Shown piece after piece: positions 1 through 59,109 of a DNA stretch of 64,000 nucleotides. Every line of letters begins with the position of its first letter. Position 1 is the stretch's first letter. Under the pieces are notes generated by a model. That model saw only the letters and a list, made by a program, of their open reading frames with translations. It had not been told where the DNA came from and did no database searches. The position numbers were made by a program, and so were the translations under genes. The stretch lies in sequence record MN871440.1, one strand, 5' to 3'.

Positions 1-87
1 AGATAAAGATATACCTTTAATTAATGAAGATCTATCTTCTCTTCTCCTTAGGTTACAATGAGTTAGCTCCGCAGTCGCTGGCGCGAC
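1..87 (-). repeat. Dispersed quasi-palindromic intergenic element, copy 1 (truncated by window edge, inverted relative to copies 2 and 3)
   Basis: Reverse complement reads gtcgcgccagcgactgcggagctaactcattg...gagaagagaagatagatcttcattaattaaaggtatat, matching 41168-41250 and 16243-16310. Confidence 0.9.
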
Positions 88-95: not shown

Positions 96-123
96 TTGAC
101 ATCATATCGGAAACGTCTATACT
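96..123 (+). promoter_or_regulatory. sigma70-type early promoter
   Basis: TTGACA (96-101) N16 TATACT (118-123), upstream of GAGGAG RBS and ATG at 150. Confidence 0.7.
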
Positions 124-16154: not shown

Positions 16155-16213
16155 AGGGAGCTTCGGCTCCCTGAATTAGCTTAATAAATTAGCCACCTTC
16201 GGGTGGCTTTTTT
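16155..16213 (+). terminator. Tandem UUCG hairpins, second is a terminator
   Basis: agggagc-ttcg-gctccct and agccacc-ttcg-ggtggct plus T6. Confidence 0.85.
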
Positions 16214-16229
16214 GTATCTATTGTGCTTA

Positions 16230-16320
16230 CACTGCGGCTTGCCGCTAACTCATTGAAACCTAAGAAGAAGAGAAGATAGATTCTCATTAAAGATATATAA
16301 GACATTTTATCTTCTCTCGC
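16230..16320 (+). repeat. Dispersed quasi-palindromic intergenic element, copy 2
   Basis: cactgcggcttgccgctaactcattg...gaagagaagatag...cattaaagatatataa...ttatcttctc. Confidence 0.9.
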
Positions 16321-16346
16321 TAACGCGAAGTGCTGCGCACAAACTT

Positions 16347-16376
16347 GTTTACATTCAGTTTCGAAGTGTGTATGAT
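16347..16376 (+). promoter_or_regulatory. Early promoter for 47/46
   Basis: GTTTACA N17 TATGAT. Confidence 0.75.
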
Positions 16377-27349: not shown

Positions 27350-27377
27350 AAAAAGGGGCGAAAGCCCCTTTACTTTT
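27350..27377 (+). terminator. Rho-independent terminator
   Basis: aaaaggggc-gaaa-gccccttt. Confidence 0.8.
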
Positions 27378-27424
27378 GTGTGAGACTATGATAATCTGTT
27401 TGTAGTCTAATCAAGGAGAGATTT

Positions 27425-28150: not shown

Positions 28151-28431
28151 ACGAGGCGCTAAAAGACATCAAACAAGAGCTTGTTGTTTTAGTTGACGGC
28201 GAGCCCTTTATCGCGTATATTCACGATCTGACGTACAACGAAGGACGAGTTCACATCGACTGGTCCACCCCTCATAGTGAAGAAGAGATAATGAAAGATG
28301 AATTATTCAAACATGTTCAAGCCGCTATACAAGCGCAAATCAAAGAAGGAAAAGAATGTCAATCGAACAATCTATTCTCACGAATCTCCTCGTTTCTGAG
28401 GAATACTTTCGTCAAGTCTTCCCATTCTTAA
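28114..28431 (+). CDS. 40: Head vertex assembly chaperone gp40
   Basis: IKQELVVLVDGEPFIAYIHDLTYNEGRVHIDW..LFKHVQAAI resembles T4 gp40; synteny before 41. Confidence 0.85.
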   Translation: METKERNYRDVLDEALKDIKQELVVLVDGEPFIAYIHDLTYNEGRVHIDWSTPHSEEEIMKDELFKHVQAAIQAQIKEGKECQSNNLFSRISSFLRNTFVKSSHS

Positions 28432-29810
28432 AATCGGAATACTTCCCGAGAGGTCCGATTCGTATCATTTTCGACCTGATCAAAAAGCATTATGATAACT
28501 ACAAGACAATCCCAACTCATAACGCGCTGGTGATTGCTCTTGAAAAGCGTAGTGGTATTTCTCAGATCGAGTTTGATGAAGCTTATGGTGGTATCGGTGA
28601 GCTGATTGGTGCTCCAGAAGATCTAGCGTGGTTGATGGCAGAAACTGAGAAGTATTGTCAAGAACGAGCGATGAATAATGCTCTGTCCGAGGCAATTCGT
28701 ATTCAGGAAAATCATGCCAAGCCACTCGATGAACGAGACAAAAAGATTTCTGATATCGGTGTTATTCCCGATCTCATGAAAAACGCTTTAGCTGTTGCGT
28801 TTAATCTCGCGATTGGTCATGATTACTTTGATGACGTCGAACAACGTTTTCAAAGCTATCGCATGAAGACCAAAAAGATCTCGTTCATGACCAAAATTCT
28901 GAACACGATCACAAAAGGCGGTGTCGAACGTAAGACACTGAACTTGATTCTTGCTGGTGTTAACGTTGGTAAGTCTCTGGGTCTGTGTCACTTAGCATGT
29001 GAGTACCTGTTACAAGGTTATAACGTGCTTTACGTCTCAATGGAAATGGGTGAAGAGGTTTGCGGTAAGCGTATCGATGCTAACTTGCTGGACGTCACAC
29101 TTGATGATATTGACGACGGTCTGATCACCGAAACCGATTTTATGCGTCGTTTCGGCAATCTGAAACAAAAGAACTGCGGTAAGCTTGTTGTCAAGCAATT
29201 CCCAACTGGTGCGGCTAACGTCAACCATTTGAACAACTTGATGGCAGACTTGCAGATCAAGAAAGGTTTCAAACCAGACATCGTTATCGTGGACTATCTC
29301 GGTATCATGTGCTCAAAGCGTATGACCACGTTTTCCGAGAACAGCTATACATTGGTAAAGGCAATCGCTGAGGAGCTGCGAGGCTTTGCGGTAGAGCATA
29401 ATGTGGTTGTTTGGTCTGCTGCTCAAACCACTCGCGGTGGTTGGGACAGTTCTGATATCAGTATGTCGGACATTGCAGAATCTGCCGGTCTTGCGGCTAC
29501 TGCTGACTTTATTCTGGCTGCGATGGAAACCGAAGAACTCGCTGAGATCGAGCAACAATTGTTCAAACAGATCAAATCTCGATATGGCGACAAGAACAAG
29601 TTTACACGATTTAATCTTTGTGTTAATAAGGGTAAACAACGATGGTCTGAACCAGATGGTAACTTTGGTGGTAATCTGGATGATGCCAGTTCCAGAGTTC
29701 AACAAGCGCACAAGGAAAACGTCGCTCAAGCCAAAGATCTGAGCACTCGTAATAAGATGGATCAGCTTGCGAATATGAATATCGGAGACGATGCTGAATG
29801 GGGGATTTAA
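28356..29810 (+). CDS. 41: Replicative helicase gp41
   Basis: AGVNVGKSLGLC, SMEM, VDYLG, SAAQTTR, IKSRYGD. Confidence 0.97.
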   Translation: MSIEQSILTNLLVSEEYFRQVFPFLKSEYFPRGPIRIIFDLIKKHYDNYKTIPTHNALVIALEKRSGISQIEFDEAYGGIGELIGAPEDLAWLMAETEKYCQERAMNNALSEAIRIQENHAKPLDERDKKISDIGVIPDLMKNALAVAFNLAIGHDYFDDVEQRFQSYRMKTKKISFMTKILNTITKGGVERKTLNLILAGVNVGKSLGLCHLACEYLLQGYNVLYVSMEMGEEVCGKRIDANLLDVTLDDIDDGLITETDFMRRFGNLKQKNCGKLVVKQFPTGAANVNHLNNLMADLQIKKGFKPDIVIVDYLGIMCSKRMTTFSENSYTLVKAIAEELRGFAVEHNVVVWSAAQTTRGGWDSSDISMSDIAESAGLAATADFILAAMETEELAEIEQQLFKQIKSRYGDKNKFTRFNLCVNKGKQRWSEPDGNFGGNLDDASSRVQQAHKENVAQAKDLSTRNKMDQLANMNIGDDAEWGI

Positions 29811-29843
29811 TCCCCTTTTCATAAATAAGATTTTGGAGGTTTT

Positions 29844-30317
29844 ATGAGTGCAAAATCAATAATGGATGCAGTCTATGCATACAGACTGGCGACTCTACTT
29901 GGCAAATCGTTTGCGAAATGGGAAGCACACAAGCTAGGTATCATCGATGATCAAGGGAACGTTTTGCGAAAACCCGAGACACCGAAAGAGAAATCTCATT
30001 ATACAAAATTTCATAGCATGGTTCGCAGTCTAAAACAGACAATTCAGCGATTCAGTGGTGGATTTGGTACAAGTGCTCTTGCTCTGAAAATGGGCTGGAA
30101 TGCTATTATCAAAGAGTATGGCGAGCCAGATCTCTCTATGATGCCTCTAACCGAGTGTGAAGAAAATAGCGATCTGCACAAGCTTATCGAAATGGTAGGT
30201 GGCGATTGTGGTGGCGATGCAACCGCGATTGCAACCGGTGCGAAGTCTGGTAGTGTGACCGATAAAGGACCCGATAATATGGGTAAGAAAAAGGTTGCAA
30301 AATCTAAGACCGAATGA
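29844..30317 (+). CDS. Conserved 61.1-like protein
   Basis: DAVYAYRL..LL.K.F..W.AHKLGIIDDQG; CATAAATA late-type promoter at 29820-29827. Confidence 0.7.
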   Translation: MSAKSIMDAVYAYRLATLLGKSFAKWEAHKLGIIDDQGNVLRKPETPKEKSHYTKFHSMVRSLKQTIQRFSGGFGTSALALKMGWNAIIKEYGEPDLSMMPLTECEENSDLHKLIEMVGGDCGGDATAIATGAKSGSVTDKGPDNMGKKKVAKSKTE

Positions 30318-30320
30318 CAT

Positions 30321-30349
30321 AATGCCTCTTGATTGAGGCATTTTTATTT
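30321..30349 (+). terminator. Rho-independent terminator
   Basis: aatgcctc-ttgatt-gaggcatt plus T run. Confidence 0.75.
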
Positions 30350-30360
30350 GGAGAAACTCA

Positions 30361-31395
30361 TTGTTATACTTACAGCGTCATATGGCACATCAGATAGCAT
30401 TTGTGTTGCCAATGTTTTCGGATCACAGTCGAGCGCATGAGATCAAATACAACTTTCGTTGTCACATCTGCGGCGACTCGATGAAAGACAAGTATAAATC
30501 TCGTGGTTGGTTCTATGAGCGAGAAGGTCAAGTTTGGTATGGTTGCTTCAACTGTGGCAAACAATTGCCGTTCACGCTATATCTTCAGATGTATCATGAG
30601 GAGCTTTATCGTGAATACATCAAAGAGAAGTACAAAGACAACGAACGTCCTAAGCGCCAAGAAGTCAACTTAAATCTTGGCTCAAAACTTGAGAAAAAAG
30701 AACAAAAATCTGTTTGCGAACTGCCGTATTGTGTTAAACTATCTGAACTGAGAGAAGATCATCCAGTCGTTCGCTACATGCTTAGTCGCTGTTTGCCGAA
30801 AGATAAACTGGAATTGTTCTATTTCACAGACAATTGGAAAGCTCTGAGTAATCACATTAAGCCAGAGACATACAAGCACGTTGAAAAGGAATATCGTTTA
30901 GTTATCCCGATTCATAATGCTGATGGTTCTATTAGCTGTATTCAAGGTCGAGCGTTAGGCAATGTTGACAAAAATCAACGTTACTTGACCGTTAAACCTG
31001 ATGATACCGCAAACAAGATCTATGGTCTGGAACGTGTTGACGGTAAAAAAACTGTGTTTTACTTTGAGGGTCCGATTGATAGTGTTTTTATTCCCAACTC
31101 GTTGGCTATCGTTGGTGGTTCTATGCATCTGAATGATGCACCATTCAAAGATAAGCGCGTATGGGTACTAGACAATGAGCCACGTTCGAAAGAGACGGTA
31201 GAACGTCTTGAAAAGCTTATCGACGCTGGCGAAAAAGTGGTCGTGTGGTTAGATTGTCCTTGGTATAAAAAAGACGTCAATGACATGATCAAAGATGAAG
31301 GCGCTACTGCCGAACAAATCGAACAGTATTTGAAGCAGAATATCGTTTCTGGTTTGAGTGCTAAATTTAGACTATCCGAATGGAGAAAAATTTAA
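30361..31395 (+). CDS. 61: DNA primase gp61
   Basis: RCHICGDS, CFNCG zinc finger, EGPIDS, LDNEPR TOPRIM; TTG start with GGAG. Confidence 0.96.
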   Translation: MLYLQRHMAHQIAFVLPMFSDHSRAHEIKYNFRCHICGDSMKDKYKSRGWFYEREGQVWYGCFNCGKQLPFTLYLQMYHEELYREYIKEKYKDNERPKRQEVNLNLGSKLEKKEQKSVCELPYCVKLSELREDHPVVRYMLSRCLPKDKLELFYFTDNWKALSNHIKPETYKHVEKEYRLVIPIHNADGSISCIQGRALGNVDKNQRYLTVKPDDTANKIYGLERVDGKKTVFYFEGPIDSVFIPNSLAIVGGSMHLNDAPFKDKRVWVLDNEPRSKETVERLEKLIDAGEKVVVWLDCPWYKKDVNDMIKDEGATAEQIEQYLKQNIVSGLSAKFRLSEWRKI

Positions 31396-31880
31396 TGAAA
31401 AATATCCCTGTTATTCGTCTTCCTCATTATCGCGACGAATGGGAACTGCCTGAGTTCAAGAGTGCCGAAGCTGCTGGTATTGATCTGCGAGCCGCACTAG
31501 AAGAAACCGTGGTTCTGAAACCCGGTCAAGATCTCGTAATTCCGTCTGGTCTGAAAATGGACATCGGTGCGCTTGATCTCGCGTCATTCTTCTTGGATGT
31601 TGGCGTTTATGGCTGCATTCTGCCGCGCTCTGGTCTGGGTTTCAAGCATTATGTCCGTCTCGCTAATACCGCTGGTGTTATCGATTCCGATTTCCACGGC
31701 GAGATCATGATCAAGCTGCGTAACGAAGGCGAAAGCGATCTGGCTATTTCTCCGGGTGATCGCGTTGTGCAAATGGTATTCCATCTGTATGTGAAAGGCT
31801 TTAAGCTGGAAGAAGTCACCGAGTTTTCACGCAAAACCGTTCGCGGTGAAGCTGGTTTCGGGAGTTCTGGCACCAAATGA
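31395..31880 (+). CDS. dut: Trimeric dUTPase
   Basis: AAGIDL, PRSGL, GVIDSDFHG, GDRVVQ, RGEAGFGSSG motifs I-V. Confidence 0.95.
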   Translation: MKNIPVIRLPHYRDEWELPEFKSAEAAGIDLRAALEETVVLKPGQDLVIPSGLKMDIGALDLASFFLDVGVYGCILPRSGLGFKHYVRLANTAGVIDSDFHGEIMIKLRNEGESDLAISPGDRVVQMVFHLYVKGFKLEEVTEFSRKTVRGEAGFGSSGTK

Positions 31881-32557
31881 TTCAAGTCCCCGAGTACGAT
31901 GATTATATCATCGACATGGAGACACTGAGTAACAAAGCGAATGCGACGATAGTGGATTTATCTGCTATCGTTTATCGGGAGGATATTCAAAATCCTCCCA
32001 GCTTTCAAGAGCTTGTGTCTCGTGGAATTAAAATCAAATTTAACTTGAAGTCTCAGTCAAATCGACATAAAATGAAGTCTGTAATCGAATGGTGGAAGAC
32101 ACAAGAATTCGATGCGAAAAAGAACTTGAAACCGAGTTCGGAAGATGTTGATATCAATGATGGGATGGCAAAGTTCTATGATTATATCAGACGTCCAGAT
32201 TTCAAAATTGACTACTGGAAATCACTGGCTTGGTGTCGTGGGAATAGCTTTGACTTTCCTATGTTCGAGGACATGCTTTCCGAGTCATTAGAGCAAGACG
32301 ATACAATCTTTCAACAGCCTGTTAACTTTAGTCGTCAACGCGACATCAGAACAGCTATTGAACAAAACTTGTGTTCAAGAATGCAAACAATTTGTCCTTT
32401 ACCAAAGGGAACACTTGACGGGTTCGTGAAACATGATAGTATACATGACTGCGCCAAGGACATTTTAATGCTGATTTTTTCTAAGCGTTATGCTTGGGGA
32501 TTGGAAGAAATTCCGACTGGCGATAATGTTGACCCACATTCCATTTTAAGAGGCTAA
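31877..32557 (+). CDS. dexA: Exonuclease A
   Basis: IIDMETL, WCRGNSFDFP, QRDIRT, HDSIHDCAKD. Confidence 0.93.
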   Translation: MIQVPEYDDYIIDMETLSNKANATIVDLSAIVYREDIQNPPSFQELVSRGIKIKFNLKSQSNRHKMKSVIEWWKTQEFDAKKNLKPSSEDVDINDGMAKFYDYIRRPDFKIDYWKSLAWCRGNSFDFPMFEDMLSESLEQDDTIFQQPVNFSRQRDIRTAIEQNLCSRMQTICPLPKGTLDGFVKHDSIHDCAKDILMLIFSKRYAWGLEEIPTGDNVDPHSILRG

Positions 32558-38599: not shown

Positions 38600-39901
38600 A
38601 TGGCTAAACTGACTGAACAACAAAAATCCCGTATTCTGGCTGGCACTCTGGGTCGTGGCGTACTGTCTCGCGAACTGGGTATCAAAGAATCCGAAGCTCG
38701 TAAAATGATCGAACTCGTTAAAGCCGAAGCTGAACGTGCTGCAAAGCAAAAGACCGGTGGCGTTACCGAAGCAATGCGTACTCAAATCGTTGAAGGCAAG
38801 CTGGGTCGTCTGGCTCTGTCCAAGCAACTGGGTATCAAAGAGCATGAAGCTCGCAAGATCATCGAAGCGATTCGTTCTGAAAAACAGAAACCGGTTGTTG
38901 CTCAAAAGCCTGTTGCACCTGTAGTACCGAAAGCTGCTCCGGTTGCTGCTAAAGTTGAAACTCCGAAAGAGGATCATCTTGGTGCTCGATTTCGTGAAAC
39001 CGACAAACGAGCTGACGAACGAGACGCCAAAATCGTTGAACTCTACAGCACCGGAGAATACAAGTCTCAAAAGACTGTTGCCGCGCTGGTTGGTTGCTCT
39101 GAAAGCACTGTTGGCGAAGTTCTGAAACGTGCTGGTGTAAAAGCTCGCCGTCCTGGTTCTCCTGCTGCTAAAGTTGCCGCACCCGAGCCGAAAGAACTGA
39201 AATGGTTTGCTTCCACCAAGTTCATCAATATCATTGCAGACGGTAAGACTTACACCGCTGATAGCACTCACGAAAGCTTCCGCAAGGCGCTGGATCTGTG
39301 TATCGCTGGTGATGTTCTGAAAGCACTGGGTCTGATTAACGTTGCTAAAGGCGTATCTCAATACGGCAAAGGCAATCTGAAAATCGAAAACGACGTTGTG
39401 ACTTACAAAGGTCTGGAAATTGGTGGTTCTGTTGTTAAGCGTATCATCGCTAACATGCATGACAATAAGCCGTTCGATTATCTGGTAGCTTTCCTTGAGA
39501 AACTGCTGTTGAACCCGAACAAGAAAGCAATCGAAGGTCTGTTTGATTTCCTTGAGCATAACGACATTGAAATCACCAAAGACGGTTTCGTTCACGCTTA
39601 TCGTCGTTGCACCGACAAATATACCGACTTCTATACCGGAAAAATGTCGAACAAAGTTGGCGAAACTGTGAAACTGGATCGTTCTAAGTGTGACAGCTCC
39701 GATGCGACTTGCTCTAGCGGTCTGCACATCGCTGCCAAGACTTACATCCCGCACTATCACGGTGGTCAAGGTCGCATTCTGTTGGTACAAGTTGACCCTC
39801 AGCATGTGATTGCAGTTCCGAAAGATTACAACGGTAGCAAGCTCCGCTGTTGCGAATTCAAGGTTCTGAAAGACATCACATCCACTTTCGGTAAGCATTA
39901 A
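38600..39901 (+). CDS. rIIB: rIIB protein with duplicated N-terminal HTH-like units
   Basis: WFASTKFINI, FLEKLLLNP, LFDFL, DG..AY, CSSGLH, VDP..V..VP.DYNGSKLRCC. Confidence 0.95.
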   Translation: MAKLTEQQKSRILAGTLGRGVLSRELGIKESEARKMIELVKAEAERAAKQKTGGVTEAMRTQIVEGKLGRLALSKQLGIKEHEARKIIEAIRSEKQKPVVAQKPVAPVVPKAAPVAAKVETPKEDHLGARFRETDKRADERDAKIVELYSTGEYKSQKTVAALVGCSESTVGEVLKRAGVKARRPGSPAAKVAAPEPKELKWFASTKFINIIADGKTYTADSTHESFRKALDLCIAGDVLKALGLINVAKGVSQYGKGNLKIENDVVTYKGLEIGGSVVKRIIANMHDNKPFDYLVAFLEKLLLNPNKKAIEGLFDFLEHNDIEITKDGFVHAYRRCTDKYTDFYTGKMSNKVGETVKLDRSKCDSSDATCSSGLHIAAKTYIPHYHGGQGRILLVQVDPQHVIAVPKDYNGSKLRCCEFKVLKDITSTFGKH

Positions 39902-39902
39902 T

Positions 39903-39929
39903 AAAAAAGCCACCTTCGGGTGGCTTTTT
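39903..39929 (+). terminator. Rho-independent terminator (same core as 16191-16213)
   Basis: aaaaaagccacc-ttcg-ggtggcttttt. Confidence 0.9.
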
Positions 39930-39971
39930 CGTTTCTTAAATAACTATGTTATTAAACATAGGAGAAACAAA

Positions 39972-40830: not shown

Positions 40831-41043
40831 ATGAAAATGACTGTGCCAGAAACGTACAATCTGATCCGCAAGTCTCTTTACGAAACAAAGAACGAATATC
40901 GATTTGGACAAGCAGTGTTCAACAATCTACCGAAAGAGATTGCAGATCAAATTCGCGGTACCGATAAAGATTTCTTTTATTGGGACAACAATCGTCAGCG
41001 AGAGATCATCGACTATTGCTATGACGAACTAACTGAGGTTTAA
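40831..41043 (+). CDS. Hypothetical protein (70 aa)
   Basis: GGAG RBS, ATG 40831; contains YRFGQAVFN. Confidence 0.7.
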   Translation: MKMTVPETYNLIRKSLYETKNEYRFGQAVFNNLPKEIADQIRGTDKDFFYWDNNRQREIIDYCYDELTEV

Positions 41044-41054
41044 CCTACCGCTCT

Positions 41055-41114
41055 AGGTGCGATTTCTCAATGAGTAGCTATACACTCGTATTGATTACAC
41101 TAGAAATCGCACCT
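41055..41114. repeat. Long hairpin in non-coding gap
   Basis: aggtgcgatttct (41055-41067)/agaaatcgcacct (41102-41114) perfect 13-bp arms with inner caat-gagt/actc-attg stem. Confidence 0.85.
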
Positions 41115-41167
41115 GATTGGTTTTAACCAGTTTAATGAATAGTACAAATAGTAAACTCTCCTAGGAA

Positions 41168-41292
41168 GTCGCGCCAGCGACTGCGTAGCTAACCTATTGA
41201 ATTTATTTAAGAAGAGAAGATAGATCTTCATTAAAGGTATATAAGAAACTTTATCTTCTCTTCTTAAATGAGTTAGCGGCTTACGCCGCAGT
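41168..41292 (+). repeat. Dispersed quasi-palindromic intergenic element, copy 3 (most complete)
   Basis: gtcgcgccagcgactgcg..aagaagagaagata..AT-rich core..tatcttctcttctt..aatgagttagcggcttacgccgcagtg. Confidence 0.9.
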
Positions 41293-41353
41293 GTTGACAC
41301 ACGTTTTATAGTATGTAATAATTCAGTTCTCTACTAACAAAAGGTAAATTGAA

Positions 41354-41854
41354 ATGAAGTTGACAACTAACATGTTGATGGGTTCTACTTACATCGGTAA
41401 TCTCTTTCCTAACAAGGAAGGTACTATCGAGTTTCATAAGTGCCACACCGCATCAATTGGTAACTGTAATCATGATCTGACTACTCCCGGCTTTTATATG
41501 ATTACTGTTTGTATGGAAAACAGTGCTCGCGAAGTCGTTAGCGTGAATCACGTTGGTATTCAGAAACGTAAATCTGGCTTTAAAGAAGTTCTGAGCCGTC
41601 TGAACAATCCACGCACCGAACAAAACAAAGCACTTGGTGATTTCCTGTGTCAGCGGTCTGCCGACATTTTCAATAATGTCAAGATCTTCCGTGCTATTCG
41701 CGAAGTCGAAGCCCGCCATAAAGTCTACTTTCTGACTTACGGCGAAATGCGTGAATTCCTCGACATCGAAGAATACAGTGCCAAGAACAATGGTCTGTCT
41801 ATGATCACCGAACTGCGCTCTAAGTACAAATTCTTTGGTCGCGACAAATCTTGA
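41354..41854 (+). CDS. Hypothetical protein (166 aa)
   Basis: AAGG RBS, TTGACA promoter at 41294. Confidence 0.8.
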   Translation: MKLTTNMLMGSTYIGNLFPNKEGTIEFHKCHTASIGNCNHDLTTPGFYMITVCMENSAREVVSVNHVGIQKRKSGFKEVLSRLNNPRTEQNKALGDFLCQRSADIFNNVKIFRAIREVEARHKVYFLTYGEMREFLDIEEYSAKNNGLSMITELRSKYKFFGRDKS

Positions 41855-44916: not shown

Positions 44917-44920
44917 AAAT

Positions 44921-44943
44921 AAAGGGAGCCTAGGCTCCCTTTT
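44921..44943. terminator. Bidirectional terminator between converging early and late units
   Basis: aaagggagc-ctag-gctcccttt flanked by A/T runs. Confidence 0.85.
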
Positions 44944-46360: not shown

Positions 46361-49300
46361 TTAGTTCACTGTTCCCATGTTATATCCAAACACTCTACGC
46401 ATACGACTGTTTTCATAGCTAGTTGCGAACGATCTATTATCAGCGGCAAATCTACCCATCCACTGAATACCGCCAGCACCGCCAGAGATATCATAGTTGA
46501 CGCCTATTGATTGGTTTATCTCCAAATCGTATCTTGAGAATGTCTTGGTAGTTAGTCCACCGTAATCATCCCACAATACACAGAAGCAAACGAAGTCAAA
46601 ATCCGACCACGGTCTGGTTAGAGTAAAGTTTCCCTTGTCAATATTACCGTCCCAAATAATAACAGCGTCTCTTGCTCTCAAATTCGCGTGATTGTGATGA
46701 CCAGCTGGAACTGGGTTACTCGCTGAATAACATCTGTTTCCACTATCATAAACACCAGCCGGCGCTTTAAAGTTCCCATTGATATCAAAGTAAAACGCCG
46801 CTTGTACCCCGGCAGAGTTACTTTCTGCCGAACCAACGCGAATAACGCCTTGACCCCAAGTTCCACCGGAACGCAATACACCAAAATCAACGTCAGTTGT
46901 ATATCCAGAACCAGTCACCCAACCTCTACTACGAACAAGTGGGTAATAATCACTTCCACCCGCAACGGCACCATAACTAACTTGGAATGGAGCAGTGGTA
47001 GAAAACTGACCGGCATAATCATGTCGATAATTTGCAGACCAAGCAGCACCGTTCATTTCCATAGTTGAATTTCCGATAGACACAATACGAGACGCTTCTG
47101 TGAATGATCCGTTCGATGTACCGATATTCAACTGTCCGGTTCCACCATCCATCCACATAATTCGAGCATGTTTTCCCGGCGTATGGAATTCAAGAATGTT
47201 ATGACTGGTCGAGTTAATCTGGAATCTACCGCTATTTACCCATGTTGGTTTACTGATGTTAACTTTATCGGCAGAAATCTTCATTGCACTTAATGTTCCA
47301 TCACCCCACGGTGTTGCACCAACTCCAAGATAAATGCCGTCAACTTTATCGCCTTCGCCATTAAACCCAATACCAGCACTAATAGCACCAGCAGAGTTTA
47401 CAGCACGTAAACCACGAGCCCATCCTCCAACAAATCCAGTGTGATTAACGAAGTAATCACCGTTTCCGTTTTTGCCATTAATCTCAAATCCATGAGTTGC
47501 GGTAACAGTTTTATTTTCGTTAAACTGTAATGCTCTATATGCATAATCAACACTGATATAAGGAGTTTTATCATCACCAACTTCAAGTGCAAGTTTTCTG
47601 GTATTTGAATTAACACCGATAGCGGTGTTTGATGTTATCATTTTGGTGTTAGTCAAGTTACCAATCATATTAACGGCACCATCACTTCCGATACTCAGAA
47701 CATTATTCTGACCAGTTGTTCCTTGACTTATCTTGAATAGATTACCTTCGGAAAACAAATGGAACCAAGTATTCGCACCATCAACAAATTTAACACTTGC
47801 TTTGTCCATCAAGTTAATAGCACCCTTGATCTTCGGCAGTGTCAACGCGCCAGTCATGGTATCACCAGCGCGAGAAACTAAGTTCAAATCCGTATTAGTT
47901 GGTTTGTTTTTGCTGTGATATACATCACCACCACCAACTTGCAGGATTCCACCAACAACATTAAGCTTACCAGCTTCGTAGCAATCTAGTCTAACATCAA
48001 AATCTTTTGTGCTTCCAACTGTATGAAAATCAATATAACGAGCAATTTCAAATACACCATCGCCACCAACTCTCGTAATCTTGCCCAATAGTCCGGTGTA
48101 ATCAGAACTAGCAGCAACATCAGATTTATTCACTTTAGTTGCAATTAATGCGTCAACATAATCTTTCCGTGTGCTAGATGCCGCATTTGTGGATTGCGCT
48201 GTTGTCTGAATAAAGTTTTGTGCAAATACATCGCCTTGAACATCAAGCCAAGCATTACTTGCACCTTTATTATCAGCTGGTTTAAGAACTCTTAATCCAT
48301 ACCCAGCTCTGTATTCATCGTGAACTGAATGCATTAACTCAACGTGTTGATCCCCAGTAGCATGTTCGAATCTAATACGACCATAGTTTTCTGCTTTATC
48401 AACAGCAGATCCAGCGGCGTTTTTCAGAATCAATGCGGCTTGTTCTTTCTCGATTTTGAGATCGCCGGTCATTGGAATAGAACCATCGGCAACTAGAACT
48501 CTGCGATTGCGATCATATACCTCACCACTTCTAATTGCGAATTTAGGCATGATTTCATCAATAACACCTTGATCTGCTTCCGCTTTAGTTCTTGTCAAAA
48601 ACTCTTTCTTATCAGGAGCAACATAACGTTCCAAATTAACTGTAATATCAACGCCGTTAATTCCTTCTTCACTCTGATACCAGTATTCAGCACCACCACC
48701 TCGCAACCAAACAACCAAATAACCAGTTGTCAACGTCATACCACCACAAACTGTTGTGTAAGTTGCACTAAAGTCGGTCACGGTGATTGCTTTTGAGTTT
48801 CCACCCCATTCGGAATCTCCACTCCATATAAACGATAGTGTTAGTCCGCCTCTATGAGTTTTGTTATTCCAAGTCTTGGGTGCTTTTGCATCATATGAGC
48901 GAGATATACAATAACGTTTTGTACCAAACCCGCGAGTCGTGTATGGAATCGTTACTGGATAAAATGTATCAGCATCACCACCAACTTCGAATTTGGTTTT
49001 ATATTGATATCCAAAATCAGTAAACTCGTTAGCATTCTCAATCCAGCCAGTCCATGACATAGCATCATCATTGCGAGTTCTGGTATAACTAATCCCAGTT
49101 CTTTGATCTGTTGCTAATTGAGTGACGAAAGTGTGTCTATCTTTATCAGCGCCAATAACACTCATAGTACCATAATCAAATGGTGGCGGGTTTTTAGATC
49201 CAGTTGCCTTAGCAAGATACAAGTTATAATCGCCAGTGCTTTCCAGTTCATCAAAGTTGATTGGTCCTCTCAACATTTTAGACTTGCCTTCAAGACCAAT

Positions 49301-50434
49301 GCGATCTTTAATACTAGCCCACGGAATAAATCCATCAGTATCAACTAGAACACGGTTTGTATTAGTCCATTTCATTGGCGCATACAGCAATACGTTTTTA
49401 GTCGTAAACTCTTCTGATGTTGTGTTATAACCAACATACAGATCGCCCCCTGCTCCACCAAGAGTAACGTTGCCATTATTATGATCTCTCAGAATAGAAT
49501 ATTCTTTACTGTTATACAGTGATTTGATACCACCGGTGCCTTCAATCTTAATAAACCCATTGTTCTTCATGTTGCCACCGGAACGACTCAATGCATCGGC
49601 GGGTAGATCATCAAGTTTAACTTTGTCTTGTGCGCTCATACTACCAGCAGCGGTACGAGTTGCCTGATTGATTGCCAGCGTTGGGTTAACGCCACCAGTA
49701 GTAGTCAGTGGGGCAGTTGTACCGATGCTCTGTACCGCAGTCCCAACCTTTGTATCGACGTATTTCTTGTTTGTCGCGTGAGTATCAGCAGTCGGCTGAT
49801 CTTGAATAACAGGCAAGTCGGTAAACGTCTTAGTGCCAGCGATATTCTGATTGCCAGTAATCTTAACGTTCTGCGCATTCAGAGTATTAATTCTGGTATT
49901 AGCAGTAGCTAAATCGGCAGTGAGTTTATCAGTTGTTGTTTCGGCAAATGTCATTGCGCGATTGATTTCTTTATCGACGTAATCTTTGCGCGTTGCATTT
50001 GCATCTGCGGATGGAGTCGTCGCTTGAATATAGATTTGACCGTCTTTAAATGAAGTGTAATTAGCATGTTTGTTTGTGTAGATACGCATTTCACCAGAAT
50101 CATTTGTAAGAACTTGAATACCAGCACGTTGACTTCCGTCACGTTTGCGACTTGCAAGCAGCCAATGAGCACCAGCGGTATTATCTTTGTCCATTCCAAA
50201 TGCTGGTTGAGCGACCGAACCCCAAGAAGTATCATTACCAACTGCGGTAAATCTTCCTTTTGTATCAACATCACCAGCTAGTGACAGTGTACCATTAATT
50301 GTCTGACCACCCTTAGAAGTGATCATGTCGAATTCTTTGTAAAATAGGCTATCGTCCAGAGGATTTAATTCTAGAATGCCTTGGTGCCAGATTAGATTTC
50401 CGCCAATCTGTGACCCTAATTTAAGATCTGCCAT
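46361..50434 (-). CDS. Distal long tail fibre B (gp36-like N-terminus, no S74 chaperone)
   Basis: MADLKLGSQIGGNLIWHQG start, TRKDYVD and GDTMTG fibre repeats; own TCTAAATA late promoter 50459-50466. Confidence 0.85.
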   Translation of the reverse strand: MADLKLGSQIGGNLIWHQGILELNPLDDSLFYKEFDMITSKGGQTINGTLSLAGDVDTKGRFTAVGNDTSWGSVAQPAFGMDKDNTAGAHWLLASRKRDGSQRAGIQVLTNDSGEMRIYTNKHANYTSFKDGQIYIQATTPSADANATRKDYVDKEINRAMTFAETTTDKLTADLATANTRINTLNAQNVKITGNQNIAGTKTFTDLPVIQDQPTADTHATNKKYVDTKVGTAVQSIGTTAPLTTTGGVNPTLAINQATRTAAGSMSAQDKVKLDDLPADALSRSGGNMKNNGFIKIEGTGGIKSLYNSKEYSILRDHNNGNVTLGGAGGDLYVGYNTTSEEFTTKNVLLYAPMKWTNTNRVLVDTDGFIPWASIKDRIGLEGKSKMLRGPINFDELESTGDYNLYLAKATGSKNPPPFDYGTMSVIGADKDRHTFVTQLATDQRTGISYTRTRNDDAMSWTGWIENANEFTDFGYQYKTKFEVGGDADTFYPVTIPYTTRGFGTKRYCISRSYDAKAPKTWNNKTHRGGLTLSFIWSGDSEWGGNSKAITVTDFSATYTTVCGGMTLTTGYLVVWLRGGGAEYWYQSEEGINGVDITVNLERYVAPDKKEFLTRTKAEADQGVIDEIMPKFAIRSGEVYDRNRRVLVADGSIPMTGDLKIEKEQAALILKNAAGSAVDKAENYGRIRFEHATGDQHVELMHSVHDEYRAGYGLRVLKPADNKGASNAWLDVQGDVFAQNFIQTTAQSTNAASSTRKDYVDALIATKVNKSDVAASSDYTGLLGKITRVGGDGVFEIARYIDFHTVGSTKDFDVRLDCYEAGKLNVVGGILQVGGGDVYHSKNKPTNTDLNLVSRAGDTMTGALTLPKIKGAINLMDKASVKFVDGANTWFHLFSEGNLFKISQGTTGQNNVLSIGSDGAVNMIGNLTNTKMITSNTAIGVNSNTRKLALEVGDDKTPYISVDYAYRALQFNENKTVTATHGFEINGKNGNGDYFVNHTGFVGGWARGLRAVNSAGAISAGIGFNGEGDKVDGIYLGVGATPWGDGTLSAMKISADKVNISKPTWVNSGRFQINSTSHNILEFHTPGKHARIMWMDGGTGQLNIGTSNGSFTEASRIVSIGNSTMEMNGAAWSANYRHDYAGQFSTTAPFQVSYGAVAGGSDYYPLVRSRGWVTGSGYTTDVDFGVLRSGGTWGQGVIRVGSAESNSAGVQAAFYFDINGNFKAPAGVYDSGNRCYSASNPVPAGHHNHANLRARDAVIIWDGNIDKGNFTLTRPWSDFDFVCFCVLWDDYGGLTTKTFSRYDLEINQSIGVNYDISGGAGGIQWMGRFAADNRSFATSYENSRMRRVFGYNMGTVN

Positions 50435-50472
50435 TGTGACTCCTCTCGTTTATAGTCATATTTAGATAAAAT

Positions 50473-50492
50473 AAAAGGAGCCGAAGCTCCTT
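50473..50492 (-). terminator. Rho-independent terminator after gp38
   Basis: aaggagc-ttcg-gctcctttt on minus strand. Confidence 0.8.
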
Positions 50493-50493
50493 A

Positions 50494-50946
50494 TTATCCA
50501 GTGAAAGTCCAATCATATCGTTTCTGTGGTGAAAATGGCGCGTTACCAAAAGTAACAAACGCTTTTCCGCCATTGCTCCACGCTTTTCTAATCTTAACTG
50601 CGGCCGTGCTCATTCTTTGCCACGTATTAGCGGCAATGCCATCAGCTATCATCGCACCTTCAAATCTAATATAGATCCATGGGTTGCCAGCAATAACAGC
50701 ATATTGAGCTGTAGAGCCATATGGTCCACCATGTTTGATTATAGTGTTGGTGCCATCAAACCAGAAATCAACCGGAACAAAGTTAGCGTATCTCGGCGCC
50801 TCAATTAAATTCAAGAATGCTTTTTCAACGAGTTCACTTATCATACCAGCGGCTGGTAATCCAGCTTGTGTTCTCATATTAGATCCCCAGCCGTTTGCTC
50901 GAAATTCTGCGTTGGCAGTTGTAAGCCAGAAAGGTAATGCTACCAT
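50494..50946 (-). CDS. 38: gp38-like tail fibre adhesin (short, 150 aa)
   Basis: Follows S74-bearing fibre; Trp-containing N-terminus (PFWL..NGWGSNM..AGL..GMISEL) like T2-type gp38 attachment domain. Confidence 0.6.
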   Translation of the reverse strand: MVALPFWLTTANAEFRANGWGSNMRTQAGLPAAGMISELVEKAFLNLIEAPRYANFVPVDFWFDGTNTIIKHGGPYGSTAQYAVIAGNPWIYIRFEGAMIADGIAANTWQRMSTAAVKIRKAWSNGGKAFVTFGNAPFSPQKRYDWTFTG

Positions 50947-50975
50947 AATAATAACGGGATTTCTCCCCGTCCTCC

Positions 50976-53900
50976 TTAGTTAATGTTAAGTTTAGATTTA
51001 AGTTCGTTCAACTCGGCTCTAAGTTCTTTGATTGCTTCTACCAACAGCGCGTTAACGCCAGAGTTAGAAACAGTCAGATACTCGATTGCATTTGGATTCA
51101 TAGAATCTTTCGCTGTTCCAGTAGCTTCTGGCAATACTGCTTTCAAACGTTGTGCGATAATACCCGCTTCGCGAGTTGTTTTGCCAACTTTGTCATATAT
51201 ACAACCAGAAAGAGAATCAACTTTGTCCAAAGCATTCAAAATTGGCTCAAAATTAGATTTCAATCTTTCATCTGAACGAACTTGAACGTCGTTGAAATTA
51301 CCGTTACCAGCAGCATACACACCACCCGATGTACTCAATGCATCGCCTTCTGTATTCGCAACATAAAACTTTTTGCCGTTATACGCACGGAGCCAAGTTG
51401 TGTCGGTCATGTGAATACCGCCGCTGTATGTCGCGTTAAACCAACCGGAGTTACCTGTAGTTCTAATCCAGTTACTTAGAGTTAATGTTCCGTGAGTGGA
51501 ACCCTCATACATTACGCGAGCGCCATTAATCTGCAATTCTTTGTTCATGTAGAAACTTGGTCTATCTGTGTAAATGTGAGCATAACCGGTATTCTGTGCC
51601 CCGATATCAATACTGCCGTTTGTGCTAACAATCTGCAACTGCTTTGATCCGCCAACCATCAATCTAGTTGTAAAATCTTCGGTACTGTTTGTGTCGTGAA
51701 AATCGATGTATTTTCCAATTTCCATAACTCCATTATTACCGATGTAAGGAATCTTACCGACAATTTCATTCCAAGCTGAACTTAGTTTAAAGTTAACATC
51801 GTTTGTGTTAACTTGACGTCTCCATCCAGGTGAATGTGTCGGCCCATGGTTAACATAGATAAACTCGCAACTAGCGTTGTCTTGTGCATTCGGCAACTTG
51901 GTTCCAGTTGTTGTTGGTGTAATAATACGGATAATGTATTGCGATGTTCCGATTACCTCAACAACACAACCAGCTAAGTGAATATTACCATATCCAGTGT
52001 CGGTCAAAACGTTATTACCGGCATAGTTCCAAGTCACTTTACCACACCAATGAACAGTTTTAAATGCGCCCATTGCAGATAGCAATTGAAGGAATCTAGC
52101 TGTTGTAATACCAGTCTCACCCGCAGTCTTACCGCCATCAGCGAAACTAATTTCTTGTCCAGTTACATTCACGTTTGTTTTTGCAAATACATCACCTCCA
52201 GAAGAAATATTACTCGCCACGTTAAGAGCGCCGGCTGGCATAGTGATTGCTCTATCGTTTTCAAATCTAATTGCTTGATATGTCGCATCTACTGAAATGT
52301 AAGGAACTTTAGTTGTTGTATCAACTTCCATTGCCAAAATGCGATCATTTTTAGCAACTGCGACATAACTATCACCAACAAGAGCACCAGTTGCAAGTCT
52401 TCTGTCCGGTGTGACTCGCATAATGTACTTGTCATTCAGTCTAACTCCAAATCCCGCGGAAGGTTTACTACCGGATCTAATGTGTCCGAAAACAAGATTA
52501 TCATCATACCACTGCGAAGTGATTCCACCAATAATACGCTCACCGCCGGTATTGCCTGTATATTCTGTTGTAGCGTTAGTCAACTTGACAGCGTTAGATT
52601 CTCTCGCCTTTAGAATAACATCGTGTGCGAATGTTGATCCTTCCAGTTTGATATTCAGAACTTCGTGTTTTGGTCCAGTTGTGTTGTGCATCCTAAACTT
52701 GAAATACTCGATTCCGTTATCACCGGTTTCAAACCACATGTAACTATCTGCATCTGCGTCCGAGTCGTTCTTGAATCCAATCTTTGCCCAGTCTGTATTT
52801 CTTGACCAAATCAATTGACTATCATTGGTGAATGTCAGATTACCAGTCATGCTATCGCCAACTTTATTAACAGCAGCCGATGGAAGACCATCTAATTTGG
52901 CTTTATCAGCCGCACTCATTGCGCCATCGATTTTGTTTGTTGCGTTGATCAAGCTAATTACAGGGTTAATACCACCGGTGCTCTTAACTGCGCCAGTAGC
53001 TGTTACACTTTGAACCGCGGTACCCACTTTCTGATCAACGTAATCTTTGCGTGTGAGCGCATTTGATGCGTCTTTCTGAGGTACGTTTGTATAAACACCA
53101 TTGCTATCGATCCACAATGGAGCAATGTAAGCACCGCCATCAGTTTTAACACCACTCAAGAAATCAAGGCGATCCGTTGCGATGTTTCCTGTTGTTGCCT
53201 GACGGATGAAGAATCTATTGTCGCCGCTTCTTTGAAACGCAATATAGTTCGGGCCATCATCGGTACAATTCAGAGTCAGCATATTGTCATAAGTGCTTTC
53301 AATTACAATGTTAGGAACTTTGAGTGTGCCTGTCATTGTATCGCCTTTCTTATCAACAAACTGAACAGGATAAGCTTCGCCGTAGAATTCTTTCCATTCT
53401 AACCATCCTGTAGATGATCTTCCTCTCGTGAATTTACGTCCGGTGAATGTGGTATATTCTTGTTGCACTCCGTTAGCCGAACGTATTACGAACAATGTAC
53501 CGGCAAGTTCAACTGGATAATGCTTTTTCGGAGTAGCATTTACGTTTGCACTCTGGAAATAAGAGCCAGGAATTACTACAGAATCCAAATCCACACTAAG
53601 AACAGTCCTAACATCAGCAATAGCTTGAACATCATCCGCAGTTGGTTTATTCCATTCACCGTATGTTTCTCTGCTATTGAATAACAGTTTTCCGTCCAGT
53701 GCTCTCAAAATATCATAATCAGCTTGGACGTTACTATTACCATTTTTTCCGGTTTTGGGGAAAAGAATACCTTCGTTATCAACATCCGATGGATCATTAA
53801 ACGCAAGCATATTAATTCCACCAAGAGAACCGTTATTTAAATTGATAGAATGCGGTGTCCCTAGTTTGTATGCATCCGTAACGTTGATATTCAATGTTCC

Positions 53901-55034: not shown

Positions 55035-55059
55035 TGAAAAATCTCCGTGTTGTTTCACT

Positions 55060-55067
55060 TATTTATA
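55060..55067 (-). promoter_or_regulatory. T4 late promoter TATAAATA
   Basis: Perfect consensus upstream of fibre A, as for T4 gene 36. Confidence 0.85.
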
Positions 55068-55077
55068 AGCCCGATAT

Positions 55078-55103
55078 AAAAAAGCCCCAACCGAAGTTGG
55101 GGC
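55078..55103 (-). terminator. Rho-independent terminator after gp35
   Basis: gccccaac-ttcg-gttggggc plus T6 on minus strand. Confidence 0.85.
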
Positions 55104-55141
55104 AAAACCGCAGTCGCGGTAAGGGTACCGGGTAGGTACGA

Positions 55142-59098: not shown

Positions 59099-59109
59099 TT
59101 GGCCTCCGA

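What the first reader, a model, noticed from the sequence alone, without database searches (positions are those of the whole stretch)
41168..41292. Three dispersed copies of a quasi-palindromic element: candidate replication origins or mobile cassettes
Seen: 1-87 (inverted), 16230-16320 and 41168-41292 share inverted purine tracts GAAGAGAAGATA...TATCTTCTC(TTC) around an AT-rich core (cattaaag.tatata). They are flanked by a (c)aatgagttagc..cgcagt module that occurs on either side in opposite orientation. Each copy is non-coding and immediately followed by an early promoter (96, 16347, 41294). Copy 2 occupies the slot of T4 a-gt. Inference: inverted protein-binding arms plus a meltable centre plus an adjacent promoter fit a transcription-primed origin; alternatively a MITE-like recombination cassette. 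It is longer and more complex than ordinary terminator-promoter cassettes.
Basis: partly seen in the sequence, partly recalled or inferred. Interest (0 to 1): 0.7.

Follow-up and report, generated by a model that had tools for sequence, protein, structure and literature searches.

The report
Seven evenly spaced palindromic phage cassettes
The three look-alike non-coding stretches are real: they belong to a family of about 150-base hairpin-forming cassettes that sit at the same seven, evenly spaced places in the genomes of a group of T4-like Aeromonas phages, which makes them good but unproven candidates for DNA replication start sites.

Summary
The window is the first 64 kb of Aeromonas phage AsFcp_1, a T4-like phage of the PX29/Aeh1 group. 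Its three copies belong to a family with seven loci per genome. All seven loci are syntenic in three genera: Angelvirus (PX29/AsFcp), Cinqassovirus (Aeh1/Ah1) and Chrysonvirus (phiAS5). No empty site was found, so this is not a recently mobile MITE.

The unit is polar, not a simple palindrome. It reads: P-box, GC hairpin, L-box (IHF-like), AT-rich arm, conserved 16-nt centre, inverted arm, variable spacer, GC hairpin. An 86-nt core aligns without gaps in 29 copies.

- The arms co-vary between genera.
- The end hairpins keep pairing through double substitutions, and their loops vary.
- The cores are among the least stable duplex stretches of each genome.
- The seven loci are far more evenly spaced than chance (p about 0.0003-0.002).
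- Whole units are flipped at two loci in some lineages.
- One copy marks a sharp mosaic boundary.

My best reading, at confidence 0.35, is a DNA-level initiation site for replication or recombination. The rivals are an RNA boundary or processing element, a PeSL-like recombination cassette or relic, and a regulator site. Nothing here tests function directly. I found no description of the family in the papers searched.

The parts
41142..41167 (+). Copy 3, P-box. This is a conserved flank on the forward-left side of the unit. It carries a TAAACT hexamer and a CTCCTAGGAA box.
   Evidence: It is identical at c4 and differs by 4-5 mismatches at c6 and c5. A related ...TCCAGAAA box sits on the same side in Aeh1 and phiAS5 copies. 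The sigma-70 scan does not call it a promoter.
41168..41181 (+). Copy 3, hairpin A: stem GTCGC/GCGAC with a 4-nt loop.
   Evidence: Predicted in the RNA and DNA folds. The same hairpin is present in 13 of 29 copies, and other copies carry compensated stems.
41188..41199 (+). Copy 3, L-box (GCTAAC..ATTG). On the other strand it resembles the IHF consensus.
   Evidence: GCTAAC and TTG are invariant in 29 copies, at a fixed distance from the arm. The match to WATCAANNNNTTR is perfect in 8/8 Aeh1, 2/7 PX29 and 3/7 phiAS5 copies; this copy is one mismatch off.
41209..41229 (+). Copy 3, left purine-rich arm.
   Evidence: It pairs with 41246-41265 in the folds. Covariation is counted.
41230..41245 (+). 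Copy 3, AT-rich centre. It is not palindromic and is the best conserved part across genera.
   Evidence: Invariant columns are listed. It lies within the least stable 0.0-0.14% of 40-60 bp windows of the genome.
41246..41265 (+). Copy 3, right pyrimidine-rich arm (inverted copy of the left arm).
41266..41293 (+). Copy 3, right end: the inverted L-box, then hairpin B (GCGGC-TTAC-GCCGC, 41276-41289), then CAGTG.
41294..41322 (+). Flank of copy 3: the early promoter of the Ndd-like gene (TTGACA, 17 nt, AATAAT). It fires away from the element and is not part of the repeated unit.
   Evidence: The gene is named from the PX29 annotation.
16223..16340 (+). Copy 2, forward orientation, between a-gt.4 and gene 47. 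Its parts are a hairpin at 16234-16245, L-box at 16244-16255, left arm at 16262-16285, centre at 16286-16301, right arm at 16302-16317 and a degenerate right end.
   Evidence: The same locus is occupied in PX29, Aeh1, Ah1 and phiAS5.
16155..16208 (+). Flank of copy 2: terminator hairpins just upstream. The copy therefore lies between a terminator and the next promoter.
   Evidence: On the + strand, which is the direction of transcription, only the hairpin at 16191-16208 is called. The hairpin at 16155-16172 is called on the - strand only.
16348..16376 (+). Flank of copy 2: the early promoter of gene 47 (TTTACA, 17 nt, TATGAT).
1..87 (-). Copy 1, reverse orientation, cut by the start of the window and record. 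Present are part of the centre at 1-25, the arm at 26-46, the L-box at 56-67 and hairpin A at 74-87.
   Evidence: The other half lies at the record's end. The intact form is in PX29 at 38869-38990.
96..123 (+). Flank of copy 1: an early promoter (TTGACA, 16 nt, TATACT). Hairpin A plus a T run just before it scores as terminator-like.

Best explanation
The element is a cis-acting site that works at the level of the DNA molecule. Most likely it is one of seven dispersed start sites for phage DNA replication, or for the recombination that primes replication in T4-type phages.

**Proposed working (inferred, not shown).** A rigid 86-bp core carries an IHF-like L-box, two inverted arms and a sequence-conserved centre. 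This core assembles a protein complex on the most easily melted DNA of the genome. Once the core is opened, or is transcribed from the P-box side, the forward strand folds into the long AT-rich hairpin and the small GC hairpins. That structure either holds the region open for helicase loading or is cut to give an end for recombination-dependent replication.

**Shown here:** the anatomy, seven fixed loci in three genera, concerted evolution, hairpin covariation, low duplex stability, even spacing and tolerance of inversion.

**Inferred:** every step of function.
For: 1. **Even spacing.** Gaps between the seven loci are 17-44 kb in PX29, 25-44 kb in Aeh1 and 19-44 kb in phiAS5. The chance of a gap variance this low is 0.0019, 0.00033 and 0.00094. 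A job done on RNA or on a neighbouring gene gives no reason for this.
2. **Fixed loci.** All seven loci are syntenic in three genera whose flanking proteins are only 60-80% identical. No further copy turns up at E up to 10.
3. **Rigid core.** 86 columns align without a gap in 29 copies, with invariant GCTAAC, TTG and centre. The spacer to the right hairpin varies from 0 to about 45 nt. That pattern is typical of a protein-DNA assembly site.
4. **Co-evolving arms.** The arm sequence differs between genera but is uniform within a genome. phiAS5 keeps the same imperfect pair of arms in most of its copies. This fits co-evolution with a trans-acting factor or homogenisation by gene conversion.
5. 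**Easily melted.** The cores fall in the least stable 0.0-0.14% of 40-60 bp windows. They are among the 16 least stable loci in PX29 (all 7), and among the top 9 in Aeh1 (6) and phiAS5 (7).
6. **Orientation does not matter.** Whole units, P-box included, are flipped at c3 in Aeh1/Ah1 and at c1 in phiAS5. The c4 unit is antisense to its neighbours in all genomes.
7. **Setting.** Copies sit in spacers after gene ends or terminators and before the next promoter. T4 oriF and oriG are a promoter plus an AT-rich unwinding element, and the active T4 origins are dispersed around its genome (PMC3016281).
8. **Mosaic boundary.** Divergence between PX29 and AsFcp_1 jumps from 0.1% to 27% exactly at the A end of c7. 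T4 origins double as recombination hot spots (my own knowledge).
Against: - There is no direct evidence of initiation.
- GC and AT skew show no shift at the loci.
- The T4 origins share no common motif (PMC3016281), so a sequence-defined origin family would be unlike T4.
- No initiator protein is identified.
- No MotA domain was found next to asiA, and the P-box fails a sigma-70 promoter scan.
- The 5-bp GC hairpins, with their compensatory changes, variable loops and excess of G-T over A-C mismatches (49 versus 9 cells), point to a single-stranded form. That form could simply be RNA.
- The spacing statistic was noticed after the fact, and the three genomes are not independent.
Confidence: 0.35

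Rival explanations
1. The element marks the boundary of a transcription unit and works as RNA. Read-through transcripts fold into the long AU-rich hairpin, a possible RNase III substrate as at the T7 processing sites. The small GC hairpins protect the new ends or attenuate transcription. This would be a phage counterpart of bacterial REP/BIME elements.
For: - Most copies follow a stop codon directly and precede the next promoter.
- RNA folds are strong, with z of -6.7 and -5.6 for copy 3.
- The central helix is 91% paired, with 3 pairs changed on both sides.
- Mismatches are biased to G-U on the forward strand, 49 versus 9 cells.
- The end hairpins use five different, fully complementary stems with loops of 2-5 nt.
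- At c1, hairpin A plus a T run scores as a terminator.
Against: - Only seven of well over a hundred gene boundaries carry the element, and even spacing is left unexplained.
- Copy 2 lies behind a terminator called on the transcribed strand.
- The forward strand is antisense to the neighbouring genes at 2-3 loci per genome, and always at c4.
- The loop of the big hairpin is the most conserved part, and the left spacing is rigid, which is unusual for a purely structural RNA.
- No Rfam family reaches threshold.
Confidence: 0.22
2. The element is a recombination cassette or a relic. One version is a PeSL-like patch of homology that mediates modular exchange between co-infecting phages. The other is a set of 'solo' remains of the 5' control region of a once-mobile gene, the zinc-finger gene gp270 that still sits next to c5. 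In both versions gene conversion keeps the copies alike.
For: - The copies are mosaics of left and right spacer variants.
- Whole-unit inversions occur.
- There is a sharp mosaic boundary at c7 and weaker ones at c6 and c1.
- The P-box read backwards is the Shine-Dalgarno and start codon of gp270 at c5. Other copies keep remnants of it.
- gp270 hits phage endonuclease families over their non-catalytic part.
- PeSLs are known in T4-type phages (PMC2839356, PMC4122927).
Against: - All seven sites are occupied in three genera, with no empty site and no target duplication.
- The copies are not concentrated in hyperplastic regions, and there are only seven.
- The identity jumps at the elements are not more extreme than at random genome positions, except at c7.
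- The promoter is not part of the repeated unit.
- Strong conservation of an 86-nt gap-free core argues for selection rather than decay.
Confidence: 0.18
3. The element is an operator-like site for a phage or host regulator (for example IHF plus a clade-specific protein) that controls the promoter next to it.
For: - Every copy abuts a promoter: early at c1-c3, late (CTAAATA) at c5-c7.
- The L-box matches the IHF consensus.
- Spacing within the core is rigid.
- The left half holds a sigma-70-like TTGAnn, 18 nt, TA(G/A)AT(T/C), which scores 9/12 at copy 2.
Against: - The downstream genes form no coherent set: gene 47, an Ndd-like gene, vs.1, gene 15, gene 26 and a large unknown ORF.
- The distance and orientation to the promoter change when the unit flips.
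- The -10-like hexamer has C at its sixth position in 6 of 7 PX29 copies.
- Even spacing is left unexplained.
Confidence: 0.1

Closest known systems
T4 ori(uvsY)/ori(34) (oriF, oriG): R-loop origins
   Same: - About 100 bp, non-coding and next to promoters.
- Contains an AT-rich, easily unwound stretch.
- Several copies are dispersed around a circularly permuted T4-type genome.
- Linked to recombination.
   Different: - The T4 origins share no sequence motif and depend on a MotA middle promoter upstream of the unwinding element (PMC3016281).
- Here seven copies share one conserved, structured unit.
- No MotA box or MotA gene was found.
- None of the seven loci is syntenic with uvsY or gene 34.
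Palindromic viral origins such as herpes simplex oriL/oriS (from my own knowledge)
   Same: - A palindrome of about 45-144 bp with an AT-rich centre and inverted protein-binding arms.
- Sits between promoters.
- More than one copy per genome.
- Unstable in cloning or assembly.
   Different: - The organisms and replication machinery are unrelated.
- No initiator is known here.
- The phage unit is polar, with extra GC hairpins and an L-box.
PeSL (promoter-early stem-loop) cassettes of T4-type phages
   Same: - Repeated intergenic composite of stem-loop and promoter context.
- Can mark exchange junctions between close relatives.
- At c1, hairpin A plus a T run followed by an early promoter looks like a PeSL.
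   Different: - PeSLs are the promoter plus terminator themselves, number in the dozens, cluster in hyperplastic regions and flank ORFans (PMC2839356, PMC4122927).
- Here the promoter lies outside the repeat and may be early or late.
- The core is a long AT-rich inverted repeat.
- There are only seven fixed loci.
Bacterial REP/BIME elements, especially the IHF-binding RIP/RIB type (from my own knowledge)
   Same: - Extragenic mosaics of small palindromes in alternating orientation with an IHF-like site.
- Located after gene ends.
- Variable combinations of motifs.
   Different: - BIMEs are bacterial, number in the hundreds and are linked to RAYT transposases.
- Here the host is a phage, there are seven copies, no transposase is present and the unit has a long AT-rich central palindrome.
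T7 RNase III processing sites
   Same: Long intergenic hairpins at intervals along polycistronic transcripts.
   Different: - T7 sites all lie in the sense orientation and are not followed by GC clamp hairpins.
- Here 2-3 copies per genome are antisense.
- Here the loop sequence is conserved.

Membership tests
MITE / mobile cassette | Presence or absence varies between related genomes (occupied and empty sites) | tested here: not met
   All seven loci are occupied in PX29, AsFcp_1, Aeh1 and phiAS5. Ah1 has 8 copies at the same kinds of site.
MITE / mobile cassette | Terminal inverted repeats with a target-site duplication, and a related autonomous transposon | tested here: not met
   Outer inverted ACTGCG...CGCAGT motifs exist, but no flanking direct duplication was seen. 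No transposase lies nearby in the annotations.
PeSL | The repeated unit itself contains a sigma-70-like early promoter with an adjacent terminator stem-loop, then the SD and start of the next gene | tested here: not met
   The promoters lie outside the repeated sequence and differ from copy to copy, early or late. Only c1 has a terminator-like hairpin plus promoter.
PeSL | Many copies concentrated in hyperplastic regions, flanking ORFans and indels | tested here: not met
   There are seven loci spread evenly, two of them among late structural genes. One clear exchange junction was found, at c7.
T4 oriF/oriG-type origin | Middle-mode (MotA-dependent) promoter reading into the element | tested here: inconclusive
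   The P-box carries only a -10-like TAnACT. There is no conserved -30 box and no sigma-70 call. AsiA is present, but no MotA domain was found in the neighbouring ORFs.
T4 oriF/oriG-type origin | AT-rich DNA unwinding element downstream of that promoter | tested here: met
   The cores lie in the least stable 0.0-0.14% of 40-60 bp windows in three genomes.
T4 oriF/oriG-type origin | Persistent R-loop, and autonomous replication of a plasmid carrying the element during infection | not testable with these tools
   This needs wet-lab assays. The public runs held only metagenome contigs.
Palindromic origin (HSV oriL/oriS type) | Inverted arms around an AT-rich centre | tested here: met
Palindromic origin (HSV oriL/oriS type) | A sequence-specific initiator binds the arms | not testable with these tools
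   The only lead is that the arms co-vary by genus and that a clade-restricted zinc-finger protein, gp270, is encoded beside c5.
REP/BIME | Extragenic mosaic of short palindromes with an IHF site, in hundreds of copies, with a RAYT transposase | tested here: not met
   The mosaic structure and IHF-like L-box are present. But there are only seven copies, no RAYT, and the host is a phage.
RNase III site / RNA family | Match to a curated RNA family, or sense orientation in transcripts | tested here: not met
   Rfam gives only sub-threshold matches to generic microRNA-precursor hairpins. Orientation relative to the flanking genes is mixed.
Intrinsic terminator | GC-rich stem followed directly by a T run | tested here: not met
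   No terminator is called inside copies 2 and 3. One is called only at c1, in reverse orientation.

The most novel reading that the evidence does not exclude
A clade of T4-like phages uses seven sequence-defined, evenly spaced replication origins built from one conserved polar cassette. The cassette is opened with the help of a host bending protein and a clade-specific zinc-finger protein (gp270) that co-evolves with the arms. This would differ from T4, whose origins share no motif.
Probability: 0.25. Interest if true: 0.8.

Novelty: new variant of a known kind. Interest (0 to 1): 0.6.

Why it matters
What defines a replication origin in T4-type phages is still unclear outside two T4 origins, and the T4 origins share no motif. 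A family of seven near-identical, positionally conserved candidates would make the question testable with one plasmid assay and one time-course of sequencing depth.

Whatever their function, the elements have practical consequences:
- They break assemblies. The AsFcp records are cut, gapped or filled with homopolymers at them.
- They have been annotated as small ORFs in Aeh1, and they stretch one ORF in phiAS5.
- They mark at least one recombination boundary.
- They identify seven conserved non-coding landmarks, useful for comparing or engineering these phages, which are studied for use in fish farming.

Tried and rejected
- **Rfam with permissive thresholds.** Only sub-threshold generic hairpin matches.
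- **Public reads.** Only Logan contigs of wastewater metagenomes were available. They break and branch at the repeat, which confirms the repeat in wild relatives but says nothing on transcription or initiation.
- **Pattern for hairpin B in IMG/VR.** Too unspecific, with 119+ chance hits.
- **Pattern for hairpin A.** It hit GC-rich unrelated phages by chance.
- **Core pattern in JGI metagenome contigs.** Seven chance AT-rich hits and no new member.
- **P-box as a promoter.** Not a sigma-70 promoter by scan and not the clade's late promoter, CTAAATA. No MotA domain near asiA.
- **GC/AT skew on either side of each locus.** No consistent shift. The signals at c6 and c3 come from nearby strand switches.
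- **Identity jumps between PX29 and AsFcp_1.** Only c7 stands out against random positions.
- **The apparent deletions in AsFcp_1 c4, c6 and c7.** Rejected as biology. AsFcp_4 has a run of N at the same place, and AsFcp_2 and PX29 are intact.
- **gp270 structure.** The AlphaFold2 model is too poor (pLDDT 56.6, pTM 0.37) for a fold search. There was no NCBIfam hit and only a non-significant PDB hit (8r2c_A, E = 0.24).
- **Small ORFs across the elements.** Not conserved between copies, by my own reading.

Full report
**Identity of the window.** Window 40900-41700 is 100% identical to Aeromonas phage AsFcp_1 (MN871440.1) at the same coordinates, and 99.5% identical to phage PX29. The window is therefore the first 64 kb of a 221-kb T4-like genome (Straboviridae, Angelvirus). 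I rebuilt the whole AsFcp_1 genome from the window plus four fetched pieces. I also fetched the annotated genomes of PX29, Aeh1 and phiAS5.

**Check of the observation.**
- The arm motif occurs four times in the window at up to 2 mismatches, against 0.18 expected. Three hits are exact and the fourth is the inverted arm of copy 3.
- The AATGAGTTAGC module sits at 57-67 (+), 16244-16254 (-) and 41267-41277 (+).
- The repeat finder links the three copies at 91% identity.
- The three adjacent sigma-70-like promoters are called at 96, 16348 and 41294.
- Copy 1 is truncated because the record starts inside it. Its other half is at the record's end.
- PX29 shows the intact form of copy 1.

**Census.**
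- Motif scans and a profile of the core find seven loci in AsFcp_1 and seven in PX29.
- Aeh1 has eight copies at seven loci, with two side by side between genes 26 and 54. phiAS5 has seven loci.
- Nothing else appears at E up to 10.
- Ah1 shows eight copies in the IMG/VR scan.
- The seven loci are the same in all three genera:
  - upstream of gene 47;
  - beside a small T7-0.6-like ORF;
  - between an ADP-ribosylglycohydrolase gene and a very large ORF;
  - between genes 54 and 26;
  - between gp270 and gene 15;
  - between pseT.2 and vs.1;
  - upstream of the Ndd-like gene.
- Flanking proteins are only 60-80% identical between genera, so the sites are old.
- No empty site was found.
- BLAST against 50,697 phage records finds the element only in 13 records of this clade. 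Pattern scans of IMG/VR and JGI metagenome contigs add no new member.

**Anatomy.** Oriented by the centre, each unit reads:
1. P-box, with a TAnACT hexamer and a (C)TCCAGAAA-like box;
2. a 5-bp GC hairpin;
3. L-box (GCTAAC..ATTGA);
4. a fixed spacer;
5. purine-rich arm;
6. a 16-nt AT-rich centre;
7. the inverted arm;
8. a spacer of 0 to about 45 nt;
9. one or two further GC hairpins.

From the L-box to the right arm, 29 copies from five genomes align over 86 columns without a single gap. GCTAAC, TTG and most of the centre are invariant. The unit is polar: the profile scores 60-78 bits forward and 8-21 bits reverse.

**Evolution.**
- The arms differ between genera but are uniform within a genome. 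PX29 has GAGAAGATA, Aeh1 has GACAAAATA, and phiAS5 has a mixed, imperfect pair shared by most of its copies. This is concerted evolution.
- On the central helix, 91% of cells pair and three pairs change on both sides. All 500 shuffles fall below the observed pairing and covariation score.
- Non-Watson-Crick cells are G-T on the forward strand 49 times and A-C 9 times. By position this is 7 against 2, which is only suggestive.
- The end hairpins use five different, perfectly complementary stems (GTCGC, GCGGC, GTGGC, GCGCC, GCGAC), with loops of 2-5 nt of many sequences. Stems this short with variable loop length point to folding of a single strand, RNA or DNA, rather than to a dimeric protein on duplex DNA.
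- PX29 copies are mosaics of left and right spacer variants.
- Whole units, P-box included, are inverted at the Ndd locus in Aeh1/Ah1 and at the c1 locus in phiAS5.

**Genome-scale pattern.** The gaps between loci are 17-44 kb (PX29), 25-44 kb (Aeh1) and 19-44 kb (phiAS5). Seven random points give a gap variance this small with p = 0.0019, 0.00033 and 0.00094. The three genomes are not independent, and I noticed the pattern after the fact, so the real weight is lower. It is still the most telling clue, because RNA-level or gene-local functions do not predict it.

**Physical properties.**
- Copy 3 folds as two small hairpins around a 25-bp stem, with z of -6.7 (RNA, + strand), -5.6 (RNA, - strand), and -6.8 and -6.0 as DNA.
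- By nearest-neighbour energies the cores lie in the least stable 0.0-0.14% of 40-60 bp windows.
- They rank among the 16 least stable loci in PX29 (all 7), and among the top 9 in Aeh1 (6) and phiAS5 (7).

**Setting.**
- Each copy lies after a gene end or terminator and before the next promoter.
- At c1-c3 that promoter is an early one.
- At c5-c7 it is a late promoter, which in this clade reads CTAAATA.
- The sigma-70 scan does not call the P-box. No MotA domain was found beside asiA.
- The L-box matches the IHF consensus perfectly in 8/8 Aeh1, 2/7 PX29 and 3/7 phiAS5 copies, and is one mismatch off in most others. This is a lead, not a test.

**Recombination.**
- Aligning AsFcp_1 to PX29 shows alignment breaks at c1, c4, c6 and c7.
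- The breaks at c4 and c6, and the internal part of the break at c7, are homopolymer fills in AsFcp_1. AsFcp_4 has a run of N at c4, while AsFcp_2 and PX29 are intact there, so I read these as assembly artefacts.
- The break at c7 is also a true mosaic boundary. Divergence is 0.1% on one side and 27% within 1 kb on the other. The AsFcp_1 flank is identical to that of Ah1.
- Against random positions only c7 is extreme, at the 97th percentile.

**A possible partner.**
- At c5 the P-box read backwards is the ribosome-binding site and start codon of gp270, which diverges from gene 15.
- gp270 has three Cys/His modules. It resembles DUF723, DUF4379 (treble-clef) and CapR-like proteins, and the non-catalytic part of phage endonuclease families.
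- Its homologues were found only in this clade.
- Its predicted structure is too uncertain to use.
- Any link to the element is speculation.

**Interpretation.** Taken together, five observations fit a DNA-level nucleoprotein site better than an RNA element: even spacing, fixed loci, a rigid protein-site-like core, extreme meltability and indifference to orientation. In T4-type biology the obvious candidate is a start site for replication or for recombination-dependent replication. T4 origins are a promoter plus an AT-rich unwinding element, they are dispersed around the genome, and they share no motif (PMC3016281). A shared cassette would therefore be a new variant. I give this 0.35. The hairpin covariation keeps an RNA boundary or processing role alive (0.22). 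The mosaic structure, the inversions and the gp270 link keep a recombination-cassette or relic reading alive (0.18). A regulator site for the adjacent promoters gets 0.10. The rest is unknown.

**Literature.** The PeSL papers (PMC2839356, PMC4122927), the T4-relatives genome review (PMC2993671) and full-text searches contain no description of this element.

Noticed in passing
window 1-25 and the end of record MN871440.1 (L004, last ~65 bases): The GenBank record starts and ends inside copy 1, with about 20 bases duplicated at the junction compared with PX29. The assembly was probably broken at the palindrome.
   Followed up: partly
AsFcp_1 84007-84076 (L001), 152255-152370 (L002), 181631-181737 (L003); AsFcp_4 L184: Three AsFcp_1 copies have runs of T13, A6 or A12 in place of part of the palindrome. 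AsFcp_4 has a run of N at the same place, while AsFcp_2 and PX29 are intact. These are most likely assembly artefacts, not deletions.
   Followed up: yes
PX29 L007-L009, upstream of genes 48, 9, wac, 15, 19, 20, 22, 23, 24, uvsW, 34: The late promoter motif of this clade reads CTAAATA rather than the T4 TATAAATA.
   Followed up: partly
PX29 L007:34855-35469 (-), Aeh1 L155:48189-48794 (-), phiAS5 L158:7133-7828 (-): gp270 is a clade-restricted protein with three Cys/His modules. It is DUF723/DUF4379/CapR-like and similar to the non-catalytic part of phage endonucleases. It diverges from gene 15, and its start lies in the P-box of copy c5. The phiAS5 ORF is annotated 27 codons too long, running into the element.
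   Followed up: partly
Aeh1 49489-49671, 187049-187153, 230599-230766 (L153, L156, L157): The annotated small ORFs Aeh1p059, p285 and p349 lie on top of the elements and are probably not genes.
   Followed up: no
PX29 77085-77139 / AsFcp_1 181547-181629: The C-terminal end of the ADP-ribosylglycohydrolase gene differs between PX29 and AsFcp_1. The AsFcp_1 version is identical to that of Ah1, and the switch begins exactly at the edge of copy c7.
   Followed up: partly
Aeh1 119976-120226 (L155) and Ah1 L168:3946-4302: In Aeh1 and Ah1 the locus between genes 26 and 54 holds two copies in the same orientation, about 170 bases apart. PX29 and phiAS5 have one.
   Followed up: no
window 8543-8581, 11227-11250, 16149-16219, 39898-39936, 44917-44940, 50469-50492: There are recurrent terminator-like hairpins, most of them with a CTTCGG-type loop. 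They form small repeat families of their own (D4 and D5).
   Followed up: no
window 38642-38713 and 38795-38866: A 72-base direct repeat at 74% identity, 153 bases apart, apparently inside a coding region.
   Followed up: no
window 46700-62800: Several diverged direct repeats of 25-92 bases recur in what corresponds to the tail-fibre region by the PX29 annotation. They are probably internal repeats of the fibre genes.
   Followed up: no
Aeh1 22534-32037 (L153): Aeh1 carries about 10 kb (five ORFs, three of them very large) between the element upstream of gene 47 and a-gt.4. PX29 has nothing there. The insertion widens the shortest gap between elements from 17 to 27 kb.
   Followed up: no
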